Below the pieces are notes generated by a model, which worked only from the letters and a program-made list of their open reading frames with translations, was not told the origin of the DNA and made no database searches. Shown here one piece after another: positions 4,080 through 64,000 of a DNA stretch of 64,000 nucleotides. The DNA is taken from the IMG/VR virus record IMGVR_UViG_3300042887_005053, positions 140,337 through 204,336 of that record. One strand, 5' to 3'. How positions within the stretch are numbered: position 1 is the stretch's first letter; the number at the start of each line of letters is the position of its first letter. Position numbers and translations under genes: made by a program.

Positions 4080-4536
4080 CTGTTATAGGAATTTTTTCGA
4101 AGTACTCTTCCTGAGAAGTAAGTGAGTAACAATCGTGTTTGAAATCATAGGACAAATTATACAAAAACCTATCATATATTTTAGTAGTCTCTCCATGTTT
4201 CAATTTTAAAATTGAGACATCATTTTCAAAGTCATTATCAATTGAAATGATTTCATCATCAATTTTACCAAAACTATCATACAAATCACAGATAACTTTT
4301 TTACCAGATGATCTTAGTTCATCAATCTTAGAGCAAACATCATTTTTACTTAGATGTGAGAAACTCATTAAATCTTTTTCCAAAACTTTGTCAAACTTAG
4401 ATAGAAATTCTTCTTCTCTTTTGGTTAGTTTTTCACTTTTTGAAATTTTATCCAAAATAGAGTTAAGAGTCTCATCTTTTACAGACTCTCTCAAATTTAA
4501 ATATTTCGACCATTTTGTAAATGTCATAATTTTCAT
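4066..4536 (-). CDS. Hypothetical protein with DUF6576-like helical motif and tag-like N-terminus
   Basis: Contains LNSILDKISKSEKLTKREEEFL. A reverse-strand late motif lies at 4544-4554. Confidence 0.55.
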   Translation of the reverse strand: MKIMTFTKWSKYLNLRESVKDETLNSILDKISKSEKLTKREEEFLSKFDKVLEKDLMSFSHLSKNDVCSKIDELRSSGKKVICDLYDSFGKIDDEIISIDNDFENDVSILKLKHGETTKIYDRFLYNLSYDFKHDCYSLTSQEEYFEKIPITDDEN

Positions 4537-4603
4537 ACTTAAAGTATATATTAAAGACTTAAAATTATTTTATATATAACTTAATTAAATATGTTTAATA
4601 ATA

Positions 4604-7075
4604 ATGGATAAACAACTGTTATCTGCTCTAAATAATGTTTCTGTTGCACTAGAAAGACTAGCTGATATGTTATCAAAAAAAGATAACAAATCTTCAGCAA
4701 CCACAGCTGCGTTACAATCTAATAAATTAGACAAACAGTTAGTTTCCATTGATAAGGGTGTAAAGCAGTTGCAGTCTGATACTAAGATGATATTAAAAAA
4801 TCAAGAAATTTTAATAAAACTTAGTAAGCAAAAACCAATGGACAAAGATCCAATTGCAAGAGCAGCTGATCCTAAACAAAAAACCAATCTTAAAGATGGA
4901 TTGAAATCTATAATGATGATAGCAGTTGGTGTATTAGCAATAGGTTTAGCATTCAAATTAGTAGGTGGTATAAAATTTGCATCAGTTATTGCGTTAGCAG
5001 TCGCTTTGCCACTTGTTGCAATCGCATTTGAAAAAATTGCTAAACTAAAAGACCTTAAAGGAAGTCAAATGAAAAACTTAGTTTTAGTTACAGTAGCAAT
5101 CGCAACAGCTATAACACTATCATCATTCATTTTATCAATGGTAAAACCGGTCGGAATATTTAAGTTATTTACTGCGATTATGATTGGTGCAATGTTTGCT
5201 GCAGTTTCTCTTGGAATAGGTAAGTTTTTAATTGGTTTGAAAAAAGCTGACATAAATCCGATGCGAGATTGGAAAATGTTAATTTTTCTTCCTGTTGTTA
5301 TGTTGGCAATTTCTGTAGCTATAGCAGCTTCATCTTTTGCCTTACAACTTGTTAAACCAGTTGGTATATTTAAGTTATTTACTGCAATATTGATAGCTGC
5401 TATGTTTGGTGCACTTTCTTTTGGTCTTGGTAAACTGATACAAGCATTTAGAAAAACTGGAAGTATTGCTGATTTGGCAAAGATGGCAATAGCTTTACCA
5501 ATAATATTGGTTGCTATTTCTATTTCTATTGCCGCTTCATCTTTCTTTTTATCTAAGGTAAAACCTATTGGATTGTTTCAATTCTTTACTGCCTTATTCA
5601 TTGCAATTATATTTATACCTATTTCTTTTGCAATACCTTTCTTAGCAAAGGCTATGAGAGGTGTAGACTTAAAAAGAATTGTTTTGTTACCAATAATGAT
5701 TATTGCCCTTGCTGCTTCAATTTGGATAAGTTCATTATTCTTTAGTAAGACAAAAGTTATACCTTTTGGTAAACTAGTCAATATATTAGCTCAAGCAGTC
5801 ACATTAGCTGCTGTTTCAATAGTTTTAAGTTTTGCAATAAAGGTACTCTCGAAAATACCTATCAGTCAGATTATTAAGGGTTCACTAGCGATGATTATAA
5901 TCACTGGTGTGATTATGGTTACTTCACTAATACTATCTGTTGGTAAATATGATAAATATCCTAAACCAGATTGGGCAATAGGTGTTGGTCTAAGTTTAGC
6001 TTTCTTTGGTGTAGGTGCTGTTTTATTGGGAACTCAAGCACTTAATCCTTTCTTTTATGCAGGTTTAGGTATAATAGCTTTAGTGGCAGGAACAGTTGTT
6101 GCAGTTTCTTATATATTAGCAGCTGGAAATTATGAAAAATATCCAAGTGCTAAATGGGTAGGTTCTACAGTGGCTATACTTGGAGGATTTGGTTTGTTGC
6201 TAGTTGCTTTAGCTATAGTTTCTCCGTTACTTTTAGTGGGTGGTCTCGCTTTGTTTGGGATCTCGAAACTAATTAAGTCAATTGATAAAACGTTTTCTGA
6301 GGGCAATTTTACAAAGTATCCTTCACAAGATTGGATAAAGGGAGTTTCTATGTCTATCAAGGGGTTCACAAAAATAATGACTGATACTAGTTTTGGTGAT
6401 GTTTTGAAAGGTGGATTAAAAAGTTTCTTTGGTGGTGGTGTGGATGATGTTGCAAAAGCAATTTTGAAAATTGATAAGATATTTTCAAAGGGTAACTTCC
6501 AAGTTTTTCCAAGCACAAATTGGATGATGGGATTGAGTAATAGTGTAAAACAATATGTAGAACTTGCAAAGTATTTATCAGCAAGTGGTGTTACTTCAGC
6601 AGGTGGTTTACTGGGTGTGATCTTTGGATTCAAAAGTTTGGCAGATGGATATGAACAATTAGCTAAGGGAGTAGGTAAACTTGGTGAAGAGTTAAACAAA
6701 GTTGATACCGAAAAATTAATGGCATTGAAAAATCTGACTGGTTCGATAGTTCTTCTATCTCTTATGGATGTTGATCAATTTGAAGCTATGATGGATGCTT
6801 TAGAGGATAAAGCACAGATATTTATAGACATTATGAATGATCTTGATAAAGCTGAGGCAGAAAAAGTAGAAAAGGGTAAGAAATCAGCACCTGCTTCTAC
6901 TGTGAAAACTGGCGAAAAGAAAAAAGGACCGCCTCCTAAATCTATGGATGATGTTTATAAAGTTCTTGATGCTATTAATATGAAACTTGGTAATATAGAT
7001 AAGTCTAGTAGTAATATTTCCGTCTACATTAACGAAGTAAGAGGTGAAGGTGGGAAATTAAAGAAACAAGTTTAA
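4604..7075 (+). CDS. Probable tape-measure-like protein with hydrophobic helical repeats
   Basis: About 70-aa repeats (VKPVGIFKLFTAI at 5141, 5351, 5558), then about 60-aa repeats (GxYxKYPxxxW at 5942, 6125, 6302, 6491), with coiled-coil termini. Confidence 0.5.
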   Translation: MDKQLLSALNNVSVALERLADMLSKKDNKSSATTAALQSNKLDKQLVSIDKGVKQLQSDTKMILKNQEILIKLSKQKPMDKDPIARAADPKQKTNLKDGLKSIMMIAVGVLAIGLAFKLVGGIKFASVIALAVALPLVAIAFEKIAKLKDLKGSQMKNLVLVTVAIATAITLSSFILSMVKPVGIFKLFTAIMIGAMFAAVSLGIGKFLIGLKKADINPMRDWKMLIFLPVVMLAISVAIAASSFALQLVKPVGIFKLFTAILIAAMFGALSFGLGKLIQAFRKTGSIADLAKMAIALPIILVAISISIAASSFFLSKVKPIGLFQFFTALFIAIIFIPISFAIPFLAKAMRGVDLKRIVLLPIMIIALAASIWISSLFFSKTKVIPFGKLVNILAQAVTLAAVSIVLSFAIKVLSKIPISQIIKGSLAMIIITGVIMVTSLILSVGKYDKYPKPDWAIGVGLSLAFFGVGAVLLGTQALNPFFYAGLGIIALVAGTVVAVSYILAAGNYEKYPSAKWVGSTVAILGGFGLLLVALAIVSPLLLVGGLALFGISKLIKSIDKTFSEGNFTKYPSQDWIKGVSMSIKGFTKIMTDTSFGDVLKGGLKSFFGGGVDDVAKAILKIDKIFSKGNFQVFPSTNWMMGLSNSVKQYVELAKYLSASGVTSAGGLLGVIFGFKSLADGYEQLAKGVGKLGEELNKVDTEKLMALKNLTGSIVLLSLMDVDQFEAMMDALEDKAQIFIDIMNDLDKAEAEKVEKGKKSAPASTVKTGEKKKGPPPKSMDDVYKVLDAINMKLGNIDKSSSNISVYINEVRGEGGKLKKQV

Positions 7076-8009: not shown

Positions 8010-8723
8010 ATGAATATGGAAAATAATCAAACACTAGAAACAAATGTGGTAAAACCAAGTTTATCATTTTTTGAAAATGATAACGAGTATCGAATGATTA
8101 GCTTTGAAACTGAAGCAGCTTTAGATGCAAAAATTAAAGAAGTTGAAGACTTCTTAAATAACAATCACGGTCGTGGTAAATCAGAAGCTGAGAAGGATCA
8201 ATTATACGCTGATGCTAAGGCTATCTGGGAACAATATGCTACACTATTGAGAGATATGGATTTTTCTTTCTATTTGAACAGAAAACAATATCAGTTCTTG
8301 ACTGAACTTTTGAGAGATAAAATGGAGTATGATGTTAATACTGTATTTTTAGCTATCGAACTAACAGATATGTTGGGTGAGTGGGTTAAAAAAGGTACAA
8401 ACAAAGATGATGATTCTGTACAAGAATATGTCACTGATGCAACAGAAATCACTTATATTTATCACTTGATCGCTAAGCATAAGGTCAAAGGATTAGGTAA
8501 CTCGACTTATAGATTTGCTGAAGTTCTTAAAAGAATCGGTGCTATTTCTAAGATTATCGCTTATTATGATACTCATGCTAAGAACTTCTCAAAAGATATT
8601 CAAGACTGGGTGGCTTCCTTTGAACCTAACATTATGATTGATGGTAAAAGTTGGGGAAAGTCTGAAGTCGAATCTGAAAATACAGATTCAAAAAAGAAGT
8701 CTAAAAAAGAAACAACAATCTAA
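8010..8723 (+). CDS. Hypothetical helical protein
   Basis: 237-aa ORF in the same operon, followed by a terminator. Confidence 0.6.
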   Translation: MNMENNQTLETNVVKPSLSFFENDNEYRMISFETEAALDAKIKEVEDFLNNNHGRGKSEAEKDQLYADAKAIWEQYATLLRDMDFSFYLNRKQYQFLTELLRDKMEYDVNTVFLAIELTDMLGEWVKKGTNKDDDSVQEYVTDATEITYIYHLIAKHKVKGLGNSTYRFAEVLKRIGAISKIIAYYDTHAKNFSKDIQDWVASFEPNIMIDGKSWGKSEVESENTDSKKKSKKETTI

Positions 8724-59390: not shown

Positions 59391-60083
59391 ATGAGTGAAT
59401 TATTAGAAAGAGTGCGATTGAATAATTTAGTTTATGGTGATGGTGTCGCTGATAATTTTAAGAATAACTCTATATTTTTCTACAATAAATATTCTAAGTC
59501 AGATAATCAGGTTTCTAGTATCGGAGTTGGTGAGATACAGATCGGTAGATTTTATCACTTACACTATCAAGATGACTCAAATTGGATGAAATATTCTCCA
59601 GTATTCACAGTAGATGTGAAAAAATTTGAAAGTTTGATTATTCTCATGGCGGTGAATTTTAATTTTATACCAGTCGAAGTGAGAATAAGTATTTTTGATA
59701 AATTTATGAATAGTGATACATTTGAAAATGATAGACTTTTATCTGTTGATTTTACAGGAGTGTATAATGAGTTGAAAAGATATGGTTTTGAATACGCAAT
59801 AGTTGAATATAATATAAAACAAGTAAAACTAGTTCATAAAATAAACATGATTGTCGTGCCTAGATTTCTTTATTCCTCTCATCCAATAAACAAATACGAT
59901 CCAAGAAAACTTTATGAAATATGGTCTGCAAAAATTTCGAAAAGAAACGAAAGAGATGCTGAGATGAGTAAATTGTTAATTGACGACTTTATTAAATCGT
60001 CAGATGAAATTGCAGAAAATTATAAAATGATGAAAGACCATATTAATAGAGTTAAGAGAAGCATTGAAAAATATGGTAGATAA
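59391..60083 (+). CDS. DNA end protector-like protein (T4 gp2-like)
   Basis: GRFYHLHY...YSPVF...AVNFNFIP.EVR, located between gp4 and portal. Confidence 0.5.
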   Translation: MSELLERVRLNNLVYGDGVADNFKNNSIFFYNKYSKSDNQVSSIGVGEIQIGRFYHLHYQDDSNWMKYSPVFTVDVKKFESLIILMAVNFNFIPVEVRISIFDKFMNSDTFENDRLLSVDFTGVYNELKRYGFEYAIVEYNIKQVKLVHKINMIVVPRFLYSSHPINKYDPRKLYEIWSAKISKRNERDAEMSKLLIDDFIKSSDEIAENYKMMKDHINRVKRSIEKYGR

Positions 60084-60140: not shown

Positions 60141-61823
60141 ATGGCTTCTTACAATCCACTCAATTCTCAAAATCAGAATAACACATATATTTCATCAGCG
60201 GTTGAAAATAAGGGTTTATTCAATAGACTTCTTAGAAATCTTTCTAATTTTGGAATGAGATATGATGATATGATTATCAGAAATACCGTAGGTGTTGGTA
60301 TTAATGAAGATCCATACTCACAAAAAAATAATTCGATGTATGACTTCTTTAGTCAGAAGGCCGTTTCATCAGTATTAAACAGAAAGTCAGTTCCTTATTT
60401 GGATAGATCATATGCGGATAAAAGAAGAATTCTAAGAGAGTATTCAATTAAAGATGAACTAAGAGATTTCGTTTCTGCAGTTGCTGATGAGTCGATTATC
60501 TATAATGATGACAAAGACTTCTGTGCACCTAAGCCTCTTTCAAATGATTATTCACAAGATATAAAGGATAAGTATCAAGAATATTTTGAAGTAATCTATC
60601 ACAGATTTGGTTTTGGTGATAGTATAACAGCTTGGAATATGATGAAAGACTTTTTGATTGATGGTTATGTTGCAATTGAAATAGTTTGGGATGACAAAAA
60701 GAAGAATATCATACATTTTAATAGATTAAGACCAGAAACATTAGTACCAGCTTATGAACCTTCAGTTGGTAATCTTTGGATTCAATATCCAGAAGATCCG
60801 CAATTAAGAAGAATATTTCTTGATTCACAGATTGTATTTGTTTCTTACTCAACACAGAATGATTATTCCGAGACTTCTTATTTAGAGGGTCTAATTAAGC
60901 CGTATAATCAATTAAAGATATTAGAGCAAACTAGAATTATGTTTAACATAATTAATGCTACTATTTATCAAAAATTTACAATCCCAATTAAGGGATTACC
61001 AAGACAAAGAGCTGAAGAACAAATTGGGCAATTAATAGCTGACTATTCAGAGGAAATTGAATGGGATGACACATTAGGAACAGTTTCTATCAATGGTAGA
61101 AAACATTTACCCTATAATAAACAAGTTTGGTTCCCAGAAGGTGATGCTGGTACTCCAGCAATGGAATTGGTATCACCAGAGGGTCATAACTTAAATGAGA
61201 ATGATATGTTAACTTGGTTTTACAACATTCTTAAAAGAGCTTCTAAGATTCCTTTCCAGAGATTTGAGAAAGAGAATGGTGGTGGTAACATATTTAGTGA
61301 TGCATCTGAGATGACTAGAGATGAAATAAAGTTTAATAACTTTATCAATCGACTAAGAGCAAATTACAAAGAGTTGATTGTAAAACCTCTAAAGCTTCAA
61401 ATGTGTATGGAATTCCCAGAGTTGAAAGATGATGAGGTTTTCCTAAATCAATGTGACATTAATTTCAATTCAAATCAATTGTTCGAAGAGTGGAAGAAGT
61501 TGGCAAACTTTGAAAAAAGAGCTGGTATATTATCAACTTTATTAGGAATACAAACTGCTGATGGTCAACCATACTTTCACATCGATTATCTAATCGATAA
61601 AGTTATGAAATTATCTGAAGAAGAAAAGCAAGAAAACAAAGCATACTGGATCAAATCGACTAAAGGTGGTGGTGAAGCTGGTGAGGTCGAAGGTGGAATG
61701 GAGGGAGCTGAGGCTGGAATGGAAGGTGGTGAAGCACCAACTGAAACACCTGAGGCAGCAACTGAGACACCTCCAGCTGAAGAGGGAGGAGGTGAAGCTC
61801 CACCGTCAGAATTCGAATTCTAA
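60141..61823 (+). CDS. gp20: Portal protein (T4 gp20-like)
   Basis: FLIDG, SYLEGLIKPYNQLKILE, ILKRASKIPFQR and EMTRDEIKFNNFINRLR. Confidence 0.92.
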   Translation: MASYNPLNSQNQNNTYISSAVENKGLFNRLLRNLSNFGMRYDDMIIRNTVGVGINEDPYSQKNNSMYDFFSQKAVSSVLNRKSVPYLDRSYADKRRILREYSIKDELRDFVSAVADESIIYNDDKDFCAPKPLSNDYSQDIKDKYQEYFEVIYHRFGFGDSITAWNMMKDFLIDGYVAIEIVWDDKKKNIIHFNRLRPETLVPAYEPSVGNLWIQYPEDPQLRRIFLDSQIVFVSYSTQNDYSETSYLEGLIKPYNQLKILEQTRIMFNIINATIYQKFTIPIKGLPRQRAEEQIGQLIADYSEEIEWDDTLGTVSINGRKHLPYNKQVWFPEGDAGTPAMELVSPEGHNLNENDMLTWFYNILKRASKIPFQRFEKENGGGNIFSDASEMTRDEIKFNNFINRLRANYKELIVKPLKLQMCMEFPELKDDEVFLNQCDINFNSNQLFEEWKKLANFEKRAGILSTLLGIQTADGQPYFHIDYLIDKVMKLSEEEKQENKAYWIKSTKGGGEAGEVEGGMEGAEAGMEGGEAPTETPEAATETPPAEEGGGEAPPSEFEF

Positions 61824-61825
61824 TA

Positions 61826-61853
61826 AAAAAAGTCTCATTCTTGAGACTTTTTT
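61826..61853. terminator. Bidirectional intrinsic terminator
   Basis: AAAAAAGTCTCA-ttct-TGAGACTTTTTT. Confidence 0.85.
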
Positions 61854-62242
61854 CTATTTAATATATCTTTAGATTTTGAGGGATTATCTACTCCAAACTT
61901 TTCAATCATGGTTTTTTGAATTTTCTTCTTTATTTCTTTATTTTGAATTGGATATTCAACGCCATAATTCTTTTTGAGTGTTTCTTTTCTTTTCTTTTCA
62001 GAGCATTTCCTACAGTAGTACTCACCCCATCTATTGCCGTATTTGACATAGTTTTTGAAAATAACTTCTTTGACTATACCACAGCTATCACATTTACAAT
62101 CAATTTTGTAATGACTACCAGTTGATAGAAGTTCTATTGGTATTATTAATGTTTCTCCTATAGCAACATCATAACCAAGTTCTTCATAGTATGAAAAATT
62201 TGACTCATTGATTTTAATTATGATTTCTCGTGTTAGGATCAA
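61835..62242 (-). CDS. Zn-ribbon/KYGV-repeat protein (endonuclease-type DNA-binding part, no nuclease domain)
   Basis: CKCDSC...YYCRKC and NYGVEYP/KFGVDNPSKS. The likely start is TTG at 62242, downstream of an AAACTT-N16-TATAAA site. Confidence 0.55.
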   Translation of the reverse strand: MILTREIIIKINESNFSYYEELGYDVAIGETLIIPIELLSTGSHYKIDCKCDSCGIVKEVIFKNYVKYGNRWGEYYCRKCSEKKRKETLKKNYGVEYPIQNKEIKKKIQKTMIEKFGVDNPSKSKDILNRKKSQE

Positions 62243-62415
62243 TTTATTTAAGGGTAGTTTGGTGTTTATATAGTCAGAATAAAACAAAGTTTATTCTAAA
62301 AAAAGATACTTTTGTGAAGTATTGTTAATAAAGAGAATTGTGTGGTCCATAAAAAATCCGTCATTGAAAAATCGAGATTTTTTAAGTTATATATACTAAA
62401 AATAAATTGCGATAA

Positions 62416-64000
62416 ATGAAACCTATACTAATCGTTGAAAACAATTCAAACCCATTGGTTGAGAATGTTCAAGTGTCTGGTGGTAGTAAGGATTATGTTT
62501 TAGGTGGTATTTTCACTGAGTTTGGTATTAAAAACCGTAACGAAAGAATCTATACTGCTGACAAATTCATTCCTTGTTTACAAGAGTTAAATGAGCGTAT
62601 CAACAACATGGGAGTTGTATATGGCGAATTTGATCACCCAGATGTTTTTGACACATCATTAGCAAGAGCATCACACACTATAAGAAAAGCTCATTATGTT
62701 AAAGAACATAACAGAGTTGAGGGTGAGATCAAATTGTTAAGTACATACTGGGGTAAGGAAGCTAAGGCTTTAGTTGATGATGGTTGTCCTGTATTCGTTT
62801 CTTCAAGAGCTGCTGGTATCACTGAATCTGATGGCACTGTTACTTTGAAGAAGTTGTTTACTTACGACATCGTTGCTGATCCTGGATTTGCTTCTGCTAG
62901 AATGAAATCAATTAATGAATCTTTTGGATTCACAGAACAAAATAACTTTAGGATATACGAAATGTCCGATGAGTCAAAAATAAACGAACTATTCAATATG
63001 AACAAGAATGAATTCGTTACCAAGCAGCAATTAGCTGACTATTCTAAGTATTTAGTAAATGAAATTGCTTCTACTAAGAAAGCTGCACAAACTGCTATTA
63101 AATCAGGTAACATCAATCCAAAGAAATTGGAGCAACTTCTTGAGTACTACGAAGAACTTAATAAGACAAATGCTCAAATGGTTAAGTATTTAGATTACTT
63201 GGCTGAGAAAGTACAAGTTGTTGTTAATGAAAACATTTCATTAAAGTCTACAACTGACAAATTAATTTCTCATAATGATTATTTAGCTGAGAATTTAGAA
63301 AAAGCTATTAATTATTCTGATTATATCGCTGAGAATTTGGATAAGAACATTTCTTATTCTGAATATTTGGCTGAAAATCTCGATAAGAACATTTCTTACT
63401 CTGAGTATTTAGCTGAGAATTTGGATAAGAATATCGCTTATTCTGAATATCTTGCTGAGAACTTAGATAAGAATATCGCTTATGCTGAGTATATTGCTGA
63501 AAATTTGGATAAGAACATTTCTTATTCTGAATATTTGGCTGAACATTTAGATAACTCTATTGCTTATTCTGAGTATTTAGCTGAACATGTTGAGGGTAAC
63601 ATTGCTTATTCTGAATATATCGCTGAACATTTAGATGACAACATCGCTTATTCTGAGTATATCGCTGAAAATCTTGACAAGACTGTTTCTTACGCAGGAA
63701 TGATAGCTGAGAAATTAAACACTACTAAATTAAATGAAAGTGTTGAAGAAAATACATTCCCAACATTAGAAGACGCTGGGTTCGCTATGATCGCAGCAGA
63801 AGAAGAAGGTGGAATGCCAATGCCTCGCATGCCTAAAGAAGAAGGTGATGCACATGAAGAGGAAGGTGATAACTTACCACATGTTATGGCATCTGAGGAA
63901 TCAGAATTGAGTAATGACAGTCACGAAACTCATGAAGAAGAGGGTGATAAATATGAGGAAGAAGGTGATAAATATGAGGAAGAAGGTGATAAATATGAAG
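62416..64000 (+). CDS. gp21: Prohead protease (T4 gp21-like) fused to scaffold-like repeat region (3'-truncated; absent from ORF track)
   Basis: Translated by hand: MKPILIVE...KNRNERIY...GEFDHP...SH...VSSRAAG...TYDIVADPGF. The frame stays open to the window end. Confidence 0.9.
   Translation, partial: MKPILIVENNSNPLVENVQVSGGSKDYVLGGIFTEFGIKNRNERIYTADKFIPCLQELNERINNMGVVYGEFDHPDVFDTSLARASHTIRKAHYVKEHNRVEGEIKLLSTYWGKEAKALVDDGCPVFVSSRAAGITESDGTVTLKKLFTYDIVADPGFASARMKSINESFGFTEQNNFRIYEMSDESKINELFNMNKNEFVTKQQLADYSKYLVNEIASTKKAAQTAIKSGNINPKKLEQLLEYYEELNKTNAQMVKYLDYLAEKVQVVVNENISLKSTTDKLISHNDYLAENLEKAINYSDYIAENLDKNISYSEYLAENLDKNISYSEYLAENLDKNIAYSEYLAENLDKNIAYAEYIAENLDKNISYSEYLAEHLDNSIAYSEYLAEHVEGNIAYSEYIAEHLDDNIAYSEYIAENLDKTVSYAGMIAEKLNTTKLNESVEENTFPTLEDAGFAMIAAEEEGGMPMPRMPKEEGDAHEEEGDNLPHVMASEESELSNDSHETHEEEGDKYEEEGDKYEEEGDKYE
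63274..63720 (+). repeat. About 11 copies of a 42-bp/14-aa repeat YSEY(L/I)AE(N/H)LDKNI(S/A)
   Basis: GAATAT at 63361 and GAGTAT at 63403 give period 42, with synonymous variation between copies. Confidence 0.92.
63937..64000 (+). repeat. 21-bp repeat encoding EEEGDKY (3 or more copies)
   Basis: GAAGAAGGTGATAAATATGAG-like units at the window end. Confidence 0.85.

What the first reader, a model, noticed from the sequence alone, without database searches (positions are those of the whole stretch)
62416..64000. Prohead protease fused to a scaffold made of 14-aa repeats, each carrying its own cleavage consensus
Seen: this ORF is missing from the ORF track. The gp21-like protease domain (about 165 aa) continues without a stop into a coiled-coil region with about 11 double-heptad repeats YSEY(L/I)AE(N/H)LDKNI(S/A), then acidic EEEGDKY repeats. 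Every repeat contains LAE or IAE. Known: T4 encodes protease gp21 and scaffold gp22 separately, and gp21 cuts (I/L)xE. Inference: this is a self-digesting protease-scaffold whose repeat number may set capsid size. An in-frame ATG at 62998 (MNKNEFVT) could give a scaffold-only product.
Basis: partly seen in the sequence, partly recalled or inferred. Interest (0 to 1): 0.66.

Follow-up and report, generated by a model that had tools for sequence, protein, structure and literature searches.

The report
Megaphage head protease fused to scaffold
This is the head-maturation protease gene of an uncultured freshwater megaphage, fused in one reading frame to a long helical scaffold built of 14-residue repeats that each carry the protease's likely cutting site; such fusions are known in other viruses, but this repeat-built version is widespread and I found no description of it.

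Summary
ORF 62416..>64000 is cut by the end of the window, which is also the end of the contig. An identical 709-aa copy (L004) supplies the missing end.

Layout of the protein:
- a T4 gp21-type serine protease (H74 and S129 invariant; the only solved relative is T4 gp21, 5JBL)
- a linker
- a predicted continuous 202-residue helix holding 11 in-phase 14-aa units, Y-S-E-Y-(I/L)-A-E-(N/H)-L-D-K-N-I-(A/S)
- a hypervariable acidic tract
- a conserved C-terminal helical domain with no known fold

The next gene is a gp23-type capsid protein, and no separate scaffold gene lies between them. Most of the best 150 representative relatives have the same fused layout (500-975 aa), and 110 of 131 long ones show a 14/28-residue period. 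Cultured Tenacibaculum phage PTm1 has a homologous fusion.

A scaffold-only product from ATG 62998 has indirect support only: Met enrichment at the domain boundary (88% against 35% expected), start-likeness at the 98th percentile, and a frozen 30-nt block just upstream.

The idea that repeat number sets capsid size is not supported. Close relatives carry 10-13 units, Lak phage (542 kb) has no rod, and PTm1 (225 kb) has a rod of about 200 aa.

This is a new variant of a known kind.

The parts
62387..62402 (+). Promoter-like element TTATATATAC-N-AAA upstream of the gene; the ATATATA core (62389-62395) ends 20 nt before the ATG
   Evidence: Genome-wide motif T-A-ATATATA-N4-AAA. ATATATA occurs in 88 of 215 upstream regions against 7.7 expected. 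Its end lies 20-27 nt before the ATG in 37 of 47 cases. Sequence read.
62416..64000 (+). Protease-scaffold fusion ORF, 528 codons, cut by the window and contig end. The full protein is 709 aa, as in L004:6103-8229.
   Evidence: 528/528 residues are identical to L004.
62416..62910 (+). T4 gp21-type (S77-like) prohead serine protease domain, residues 1 to about 165. Catalytic His74 = 62635-62637; Ser129 = 62800-62802.
   Evidence: phrog_207 E 2e-31. Profile search of the PDB finds only 5JBL (T4 gp21), E 1e-7, with the two mutated catalytic positions aligned to H74 and S129. H74 and S129 are invariant in 93 diverse sequences.
62911..62997 (+). Linker between protease and scaffold, residues 166-194. 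It contains I189-N190-E191, a possible self-cleavage site (Glu191 kept in only about half of relatives).
   Evidence: sequence read directly.
62944..62973 (+). 30-nt block with frozen synonymous sites (AAC TTT AGG ATA TAC GAA ATG TCC GAT GAG). It contains ATG183 (62962-62964) and can form a GGAUAU/AUGUCC hairpin.
   Evidence: Synonymous entropy 0.38 against a gene-wide 0.96. The rare codons AGG (5% of Arg) and TCC (3% of Ser) are fixed in 47/50. Predicted hairpin of -7 kcal/mol with no covariation.
62998..63000 (+). In-frame ATG (Met195), candidate start of a scaffold-only product
   Evidence: ATG in 50/50 close relatives. Met enriched at the boundary in 135 diverse relatives: 66% against 11% expected in 7 columns. 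Start-site score at the 98.3rd percentile of 917 internal ATGs. Aligns with the start of the separate BF scaffold gene.
63022..63723 (+). Predicted helical rod: helix 203-230, a short break, then one continuous helix 235-436 (202 residues, about 30 nm)
   Evidence: AlphaFold2 on an 87-sequence alignment, pLDDT 82-93 over the rod.
63271..63732 (+). Eleven in-phase 14-aa units (42 nt each) with consensus Y-S-E-Y-(I/L)-A-E-(N/H)-L-D-K-N-I-(A/S). Each carries an (L/I)-A-E site.
   Evidence: In 474 units from 48 proteins Y1, Y4, A6 and E7 are ~100% conserved. DNA identity between units is only 78%.
63733..64000 (+). Start of the acidic, predicted disordered and hypervariable tract (residues 440 to about 545; it continues beyond the window)
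   Evidence: pLDDT below 50. Mean column conservation 0.54 with 20% gaps among relatives.
63932..63998 (+). Three EEEGDKY repeats (21-nt period, 95% DNA matches): a recent local expansion inside the acidic tract
   Evidence: Not conserved in relatives.

Best explanation
This is the head-assembly gene of an uncultured freshwater megaphage. It joins two proteins that T4 makes separately: the prohead maturation protease (gp21 type, Ser-His active site) and a scaffolding-core protein. The full 709-aa protein has five parts: protease, linker, a ~30-nm alpha-helical rod made mostly of eleven 14-residue (double-heptad) units, an acidic disordered tract, and a conserved C-terminal helical domain.

Proposed mechanism (inferred, not shown):
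1. The rod self-associates through its wide apolar/Asn face to build the core around which the gp23-type capsid protein assembles.
2. The C-terminal domain anchors the protein in the prohead, most likely on the capsid protein.
3. The covalently attached protease is thereby carried inside.
4. After shell completion the protease cuts after Glu in the (L/I)-A-E site of every unit. This reduces the rod to peptides of about 14 residues, small enough to leave the shell.

A scaffold-only product is probably also made from the in-frame ATG at 62998, giving more scaffold than protease, as in Mu, lambda and the herpesviruses. I put this at about 55%.
For: Shown:
- The ORF is identical over 528/528 residues to a complete 709-aa copy.
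- Protease family: phrog_207 E 2e-31. The only PDB match is T4 gp21, 5JBL, E 1e-7, and the crystallised chain has Ala at the two positions that align with the invariant H74 and S129.
- Gene order is portal, (homing endonuclease), fusion, gp23-type capsid protein, in the window's twin L004 and in the 642 kb and 735 kb genomes.
- In five complete megaphage genomes the scaffold part matches no second full-length gene.
- The scaffold part aligns from residue 4 after Met195 with residue 5 of the separate scaffolding protein of Serratia phage BF (E 7e-6). There the protease and scaffold genes are adjacent and in the same frame.
- The fused layout is found in most of the best 150 representatives, with a 14/28 period in 110 of 131.
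- A continuous 202-residue helix is predicted.
- The repeats hold 11 (L/I)xE sites against 4.1 expected, and A6-E7 is invariant in 474 units.

From the literature:
- T4-type and giant-phage prohead proteases all cut after Glu in x-x-E motifs and degrade core proteins at multiple sites (PMC5694885).
- T4 has about 580 gp22 to 55-100 gp21, and shell openings of 14-17 A for peptide exit (PMC9546572).

For the internal start:
- ATG195 is present in 50/50 close relatives.
- Met is enriched at the boundary, 88% against 35% expected.
- Its start-site score is at the 98.3rd percentile.
- A block of frozen synonymous sites lies 25-54 nt upstream.
Against: - No biochemical or structural data exist for any member, and none of the megaphages is cultured (PMC9723777).
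- There is no detectable similarity to T4 gp22. The BF scaffold similarity is weak and in a helical, compositionally biased region; the reverse search of the megaphage genomes with the BF scaffold found nothing.
- The C-terminal domain has no known fold.
- The protease's specificity is inferred from relatives. The capsid protein has no Glu at the column of the T4 cleavage site, only a conserved I-N-E about 20 residues earlier.
- Lak phages carry the fused protease and a related C-terminal region but no rod, so the rod may not be the universal scaffold.
- For the internal start: the genome's usual promoter motif is not at its usual distance, PTm1 has no Met at the boundary, and the RNA contigs cannot show transcript starts.
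Confidence: 0.7

Rival explanations
1. Fusion-only scaffold, as in phage P2 gpO. Every scaffold molecule carries its own protease, no scaffold-only product is made, and Met195 is kept for structural reasons or as a relic of an ancestral gene start.
For: One ORF with no stop in all relatives. The genome's normal promoter element is not at its normal distance from ATG195. PTm1 lacks a boundary Met. One error-free RNA-library contig bridges the junction. That P2 gpO works this way is from my own knowledge.
Against: Met is strongly enriched at the boundary across proteins as little as 40% identical. The ATG195 context is start-like at the 98.3rd percentile. There is nucleotide-level constraint just upstream. 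A 1:1 protease:scaffold ratio would differ greatly from T4's roughly 1:6-10.
Confidence: 0.3
2. The extension is mainly a targeting and tethering arm for the protease, like the auto-removed C-terminal region of phiKZ gp175 or SPN3US gp245. On this reading it is not the principal scaffold, which would be encoded elsewhere in the genome.
For: The giant-phage proteases have a C-terminal region inferred to target them into the prohead and removed by autoproteolysis (PMC5694885). The C-terminal domain is conserved more widely than the rod: PTm1 at hhalign 95.8%, and a Lak motif seen by eye. Lak-A1 has no rod. Only 35% of this genome is in hand.
Against: An arm of 500 residues, including a 30-nm rod conserved at 91% column identity, is far more than tethering needs. 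The position and the collinear similarity match the separate scaffold gene of BF. No second scaffold-like gene was found by similarity in five complete genomes, although a dissimilar scaffold would be missed.
Confidence: 0.2
3. The number of 14-aa units acts as a ruler that sets capsid size.
For: The 735 kb genome has 13 units plus a 15-aa helical insert, against 11-12 units in the 635-642 kb genomes. In T4, gp22 mutations alter head length (PMC9546572). One unit adds about 2 nm of helix, by arithmetic.
Against: Only five genomes of known size are available. Genomes of almost the same size (636 and 642 kb) have 11 and 12 units. Relatives 84-89% identical to the window's protease carry 10 to 13 units. 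Lak-A1 (542 kb) has no rod, and PTm1 (225 kb) has a rod of about 200 aa against about 240 here. Unit count correlates only weakly with protein length in the wider family (rho 0.21, p 0.05, with an insensitive unit model).
Confidence: 0.1

Closest known systems
T4 gp21 (prohead protease, MEROPS S77) plus gp22 (major scaffolding core protein)
   Same: Same protease family and the same catalytic His/Ser positions. Same place in the head gene cluster, between portal and gp23-type capsid protein. A helical core protein rich in (L/I)xE sites, which in T4 is degraded to small peptides.
   Different: In T4 these are two genes; here they are one ORF. There is no detectable sequence similarity to gp22. 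The rod is a regular 14-aa array and is followed by an acidic tract and a C-terminal domain that T4 gp22 lacks.
Serratia phage BF / Rak2-like jumbo phages: BF_0253 protease plus BF_0254 scaffolding protein
   Same: The two genes are adjacent and in the same frame, followed by the capsid gene. One tblastn segment of the fusion spans both. The scaffold N-termini are collinear.
   Different: A stop codon and a 69-nt spacer separate the two genes. The BF scaffold lacks the C-terminal domain.
Tenacibaculum phage PTm1 ORF-300, 'prohead core scaffolding protein and protease' (cultured, 225 kb)
   Same: A single 564-aa ORF with the protease at the N-terminus, a repeat-containing middle, an acidic tract and a homologous C-terminal domain (hhalign 95.8%, E 8e-9), directly upstream of the capsid gene.
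   Different: Its repeats are about 16 aa long (SEGIEKWIKTDYTKQL) and lack the Y..Y(I/L)AE signature. It has no Met at the domain boundary. Its genome is about a third the size.
Nested protease/scaffold genes: Mu I/Z, lambda C/Nu3, herpesvirus UL26/UL26.5
   Same: Protease N-terminal and scaffold C-terminal in one frame. In these systems a scaffold-only product from an internal in-frame start outnumbers the fusion (PMC4378225; PMC11565193). Here an internal start is indicated indirectly.
   Different: The sequence families differ. The Mu-type starts use a Shine-Dalgarno site, which this genome does not use. No repeat-built rod is described there. The lambda details are from my own knowledge.
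phiKZ gp175 / SPN3US gp245 giant-phage prohead proteases (MEROPS S80)
   Same: A gp21-related protease with a C-terminal extension that is removed by autoproteolysis and thought to target the enzyme into the prohead. There is a weak Pfam S80 hit.
   Different: Their extension is about 70-100 residues, not about 500. Their specificity is S/A/G-x-E or A-x-E. No counterpart of T4 gp22 had been confirmed in those giant phages (PMC5694885, 2017).

Membership tests
T4 gp21-type prohead serine protease (Pfam PF03420 Peptidase_S77 / phrog_207) | Significant match to the family profile | tested here: met
   phrog_207 E 2e-31 over residues 5-256. A profile of 93 relatives hits only T4 gp21 (5JBL) in the PDB, E 1e-7. 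Caveat: the single-sequence Pfam S77 score (19.6 bits) is below the curated cut-off of 27, while the S80 hit (25.2) is just above its cut-off of 23.4 but covers only residues 35-85.
T4 gp21-type prohead serine protease (Pfam PF03420 Peptidase_S77 / phrog_207) | Catalytic His and Ser at the positions of T4 His85 and Ser140 | tested here: met
   H74 and S129 align with T4 H85 and S140. These are the two positions replaced by Ala in the crystallised chain. Both are invariant in 93 sequences.
T4 gp21-type prohead serine protease (Pfam PF03420 Peptidase_S77 / phrog_207) | Cleavage after Glu in an (L/I)-x-E motif | not testable with these tools
   Specificity is inferred from relatives (PMC5694885). 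The only supporting facts here are the enrichment of sites in the repeats and an invariant I-N-E in the capsid protein's N-terminal region.
T4 gp22-type scaffolding core protein | Sequence homology to gp22 or to a recognised scaffolding protein | tested here: inconclusive
   T4 gp22: no similarity (E 1.6). BF_0254 scaffolding protein: E 7e-6, 29% over 182 aa, collinear from the N-terminus. The region is helical and compositionally biased, and the reverse genome search found nothing. No Pfam or PHROG family matches the scaffold part.
T4 gp22-type scaffolding core protein | Encoded between the protease and the major capsid protein gene | tested here: met
   The fusion is directly followed by a Gp23-family gene (PF07068, E 1e-25) in L004 and in the 642 and 735 kb genomes.
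T4 gp22-type scaffolding core protein | Elongated alpha-helical protein with multiple protease sites | tested here: met
   A 202-residue continuous helix is predicted. The repeats hold 11 (L/I)xE sites against 4.1 expected.
T4 gp22-type scaffolding core protein | Present in proheads and degraded or absent in mature heads | not testable with these tools
   No cultured member has published prohead or virion proteomics in the library searched.
Nested protease/scaffold gene (Mu I/Z, lambda C/Nu3, herpesvirus UL26/UL26.5) | Protease and scaffold in one reading frame, with the protease N-terminal | tested here: met
Nested protease/scaffold gene (Mu I/Z, lambda C/Nu3, herpesvirus UL26/UL26.5) | In-frame internal start that yields the scaffold alone | tested here: inconclusive
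   Indirect support only: a conserved ATG195, Met enrichment at the boundary, a start-like context and an upstream frozen block. RNA contigs cover the junction but cannot show starts.
Nested protease/scaffold gene (Mu I/Z, lambda C/Nu3, herpesvirus UL26/UL26.5) | The C-terminal end binds the major capsid protein | tested here: inconclusive
   The one complex prediction gave no verdict, which is no evidence either way. The C-terminal domain is conserved, but its partner is unknown.

The most novel reading that the evidence does not exclude
The 14-residue unit may be a modular 'erasable brick'. It would be a self-associating helical module with a built-in protease site that builds the megaphage head core. 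On this reading its copy number fine-tunes core dimensions within a lineage. Other phage proteins that carry 3-4 copies of the same unit (83-aa and 207-aa ORFs in LR745206 and LR756501) would be recruited into the prohead by co-assembling with the rod and then released by the same cut. That would be a repeat-based capsid-targeting system.
Probability: 0.15. Interest if true: 0.75.

Novelty: new variant of a known kind. Interest (0 to 1): 0.5.

Why it matters
How capsids large enough for 0.5-0.7 Mb of DNA are built is unknown. No megaphage has been cultured and their virion size has never been measured (PMC9723777). [quoted passage not shown]

This gene gives a concrete candidate for the core of the largest known phage heads. 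It is a single polypeptide that brings together a protease, a ~30-nm rod with a cleavage site every 14 residues, and a conserved anchoring domain.

The family is large: more than 100 clusters, each at most 50% identical to the others. It also has a cultured member, PTm1, so the predictions can be tested with existing material. The predictions are self-clearing of the rod into ~14-mers, a nested scaffold-only product, and binding of the C-terminal domain to the capsid protein.

Tried and rejected
- **Complex prediction:** capsid protein (A6) against the scaffold C-terminal domain (A5) gave no verdict (score 0.00). I do not use it as evidence either way.
- **Fold search of the C-terminal domain:** no PDB match with E <= 0.001. 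The viral library returned only relatives of the same family and a weak hit to the pT24 'prohead core scaffold'.
- **Single-sequence PDB search with the protease domain:** nothing. The profile search was needed.
- **T4 gp22 or BF scaffold against the C-terminal domain profile:** no similarity.
- **Shine-Dalgarno reading of AGGA-N8-ATG183:** rejected. The genome does not use SD sites (4.7% of starts against 7.7% background), and the ATG183 context is not start-like (80th percentile).
- **Internal promoter reading of the frozen block:** not supported. It matches the ATATATA element only partly and at the wrong distance, and AGGAT..ATATA is not recurrent in the genome (1 hit against 2 expected).
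- **RNA hairpin reading:** possible but weak (-7 kcal/mol, no compensatory changes).
- **+1 frameshift to a protease-only product:** considered. The downstream +1 stop depends on the ATA codon at residue 189, and 13 of 50 relatives use another Ile codon there (read), so I dropped it.
- **Metatranscriptome contigs:** they cover both halves and the junction but cannot show starts, strand or level.
- **A 14-aa unit HMM:** too narrow for diverged relatives. The lag analysis was used instead.
- **Weak DNA match at window 8549-8587:** it lies in an unrelated ORF, and the own-genome search with the scaffold part finds no second copy in the 204-kb fragment.
- **Capsid-protein cleavage-site comparison with T4:** only suggestive.

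Full report
**1. What is there.**
The + strand frame from 62416 is open for 528 codons and runs off the window. The window ends exactly at the end of its contig, a 204,336-base virus record that CheckV rates 35% complete. The gene is therefore truncated by the assembly. That is the likely reason a track of closed ORFs did not list it.

An IMG/VR contig (L004) carries a copy that is 528/528 identical and continues to a stop at 709 aa. I use it as the full-length sequence (P0002).

The tandem structure is real:
- a 42-nt period with 9.5 copies at 63276-63672, and a 21-nt period with 3.2 copies at 63932-63998;
- eleven units in perfect 14-residue register at residues 286-439 (window 63271-63732), each with (L/I)-A-E at the same place.

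**2. Context and identity.**
Upstream lie a T4 gp20-type portal gene (60141-61823, PF07230, E 1e-58) and, on the other strand, a small homing-endonuclease-like ORF.

In L004 and in the complete 642 kb and 735 kb relatives, the next gene after the fusion is a gp23-type major capsid protein (PF07068, E 1e-25). No separate scaffold gene lies between them.

The closest database records are six uncultured phage genomes of 462-735 kb. Among 50,697 phage records they are also the only ones that contain the scaffold part. The literature describes them as the largest megaphages, from freshwater and subsurface samples, uncultured and with unknown virion size (PMC9723777).

The exact sequence occurs in lake and freshwater metagenomes from more than ten studies, and short pieces occur in metatranscriptome libraries.

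**3. The protease.**
- Residues 5-256 match phrog_207, 'head maturation protease' (E 2e-31).
- The Pfam matches are weak: S80 is just above its cut-off and S77 is below it.
- A profile of 93 diverse relatives finds one solved structure, T4 gp21 (5JBL, E 1e-7).
- Wild-type T4 has His85 and Ser140 where the crystallised chain has Ala. These positions align with H74 and S129, which are invariant in all 93 sequences.

**4. The scaffold part.**
AlphaFold2, run on an 87-sequence alignment, predicts four elements:
- a helix at residues 203-230;
- one uninterrupted helix at 235-436 (202 residues, about 30 nm, pLDDT 82-93);
- a disordered acidic tract at about 438-537;
- a helical domain at 538-708 (pLDDT about 90; 86.8 when folded alone).

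The unit logo from 474 units in 48 proteins is Y-S-E-Y-(I/L)-A-E-(N/H)-L-D-K-N-I-(A/S), with Y1, Y4, A6 and E7 essentially invariant. Fourteen residues is two heptads. On a helix the apolar and Asn positions cover a face of about 200 degrees and both Glu residues lie on the polar face. My inference is that this fits lateral packing with more than one neighbour.

The units share only 78% DNA identity. A 14- or 28-residue lag gives the best self-similarity in 110 of 131 long relatives whose proteases are as little as 40% identical. The array is therefore old and maintained by selection on the protein. The EEEGDKY repeats (95% DNA identity) sit in a hypervariable tract and are a recent expansion.

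The repeat block is the most conserved part of the whole protein, with 0.91 mean column conservation.

**5. Is it a scaffold?**
For:
- Position: it occupies the gp22 slot.
- In Serratia phage BF the protease (210 aa) and the annotated scaffolding protein (375 aa) are adjacent and in the same frame. One tblastn segment of the fusion spans both.
- The part after Met195 aligns with the BF scaffold from residue 4 against residue 5 (E 7e-6).
- The rod is elongated and helical and holds 11 (L/I)xE sites against 4.1 expected.
- Searching five complete megaphage genomes with the scaffold part finds no second full-length copy.

Against:
- There is no similarity to T4 gp22.
- The BF similarity is weak and was not recovered in the reverse direction.
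- A dissimilar scaffold elsewhere in the genome cannot be excluded.

The C-terminal domain matches no Pfam family and no PDB fold. It is homologous to the C-terminus of the 564-aa fused 'prohead core scaffolding protein and protease' of cultured Tenacibaculum phage PTm1 (hhalign 95.8%, E 8e-9). By eye, a related motif ends the fused protease of Lak-A1.

**6. Self-digestion.**
This is inference. The prohead proteases of T4, phiKZ, 201phi2-1 and SPN3US all cut after Glu in a short x-x-E motif; T4 examples are ITE and LTE. They process core proteins at multiple sites so that the fragments can leave, and the giant-phage enzymes remove their own C-terminal region (PMC5694885). The unexpanded T4 shell has openings of 14-17 A through which the degraded peptides probably exit (PMC9546572).

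A cut at every (L/I)AE would give peptides of 14 residues. The capsid protein of this family has an invariant I-N-E at residues 42-44, ahead of its conserved body. It does not align with the T4 gp23 cleavage column.

**7. A scaffold-only product?**
- ATG195 (62998) is present in 50/50 close relatives.
- Among 135 diverse fused proteins, 88% have a Met in aligned columns 183-200 against 35% expected. In the seven columns 192-198 it is 66% against 11%.
- Under a start-site model trained on this genome's own gene starts, ATG195 scores at the 98.3rd percentile of 917 internal in-frame ATGs, within the range of real starts. ATG183 does not.
- Codons 177-186 (62944-62973) have almost frozen synonymous sites (entropy 0.38 against 0.96). 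They include the rare codons AGG and TCC, fixed in 47/50.
- The block can form a small hairpin in which AGG pairs with TCC. The one lineage sampled that lost AGG also lost TCC and Met183. The predicted energy is weak and there is no covariation.
- The block is not a Shine-Dalgarno site, because the genome does not use them. It is also not a good copy of the genome's promoter-like element T-A-ATATATA-N4-AAA.

Nested scaffold starts inside protease genes are established in Mu-like phages and herpesviruses, where the scaffold-only form is in about 10-fold excess (PMC4378225; PMC11565193). T4 has about 580 gp22 to 55-100 gp21.

I rate an internal product at about 55%. The alternative, a fusion-only scaffold like P2 gpO (from my own knowledge), remains open.

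**8. The ruler idea.**
- Unit number ranges from 10 to 13 among 74 close relatives, and 12 is the commonest count.
- In genomes of known size it is 12 (642 kb), 12 (635 kb), 11 (636 kb) and 13 plus a 15-aa insert (735 kb). A relative on a 465 kb contig has 11.
- LR756500 (462 kb) has degenerate units.
- Lak-A1 (542 kb) has no rod, and PTm1 (225 kb) has about 200 aa of different repeats roughly 16 aa long.

This does not support a general ruler. A fine-tuning role within the clade is not excluded.

**9. Novelty.**
Protease-scaffold fusions and nested scaffold genes are textbook features of other virus lineages, and PTm1's fused gene is already annotated under a generic label. I found no paper that describes the fusion of a T4-type protease with a scaffold, the 14-residue periodic rod with one protease site per unit, the conserved C-terminal domain, or the size of this family. 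I classify it as a new variant of a known kind.

**10. Limits.**
- All function is inferred from sequence, synteny and predicted structure.
- The single complex prediction gave no verdict.
- Loci fetched from annotated records (L083-L091) were used only for reading and comparison. They were not handed to the fold tools.

Noticed in passing
window 61835-62287 (- strand): A 150-aa HNH/homing-endonuclease-like ORF (DUF7487, phrog_12131/phrog_5104) sits between the portal and protease genes. The 735 kb relative (L085) has no ORF there, so it looks like a mobile insertion into the head gene cluster.
   Followed up: partly
whole contig G000; example at window 62387-62402: There is a promoter-like element T-A-ATATATA-N4-AAA whose end lies 20-27 nt before the ATG in 37 of 47 cases. 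ATATATA occurs in 88 of 215 upstream regions against about 8 expected. The genome does not use Shine-Dalgarno sites. Together with the nearest proteases being in Prevotella (Lak) and Tenacibaculum phages, this hints at a Bacteroidota host.
   Followed up: partly
L092:336-587 (-) = LR745206 about 460435-460686; L093:61-684 (+) = LR756501 about 619760-620383: Small ORFs (83 aa and 207 aa) far from the head genes carry 3-4 copies of the same Y..Y(I/L)AE..D..I 14-aa unit. They could co-assemble with the scaffold rod as a targeting tag, or they could be remnants of duplications. No such copy exists in the 204-kb fragment that holds this window.
   Followed up: partly
window 62944-62973: This 30-nt stretch inside the coding sequence has frozen synonymous sites, including two rare codons (AGG, TCC) that can pair in a small hairpin. 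One sublineage (L066 and, at most two other distinct sequences) has lost the whole block together with Met183. Its function is unexplained.
   Followed up: yes
window 61650-61823 (portal C-terminus): The portal protein ends in a G/E/A/P-rich low-complexity tail of about 60 residues that finishes with SEFEF. The tail is present but very different in sequence in the 642 and 735 kb relatives.
   Followed up: no
L091 (Prevotella phage Lak-A1, MK250016) about 4480-6240: The Lak megaphage protease is also fused. It has a ~150-aa acidic low-complexity tract and a C-terminal region with a motif related by eye (..FWEKTGLR), but no helical repeat rod. The frame is open under table 11, so no recoding was needed here.
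   Followed up: partly
window 59391-60083 (+): A 230-aa ORF directly upstream of the portal has no Pfam or PHROG match. An ORF of similar size (252 aa) occupies the same position in the 735 kb relative (L085:4244-5002).
   Followed up: no
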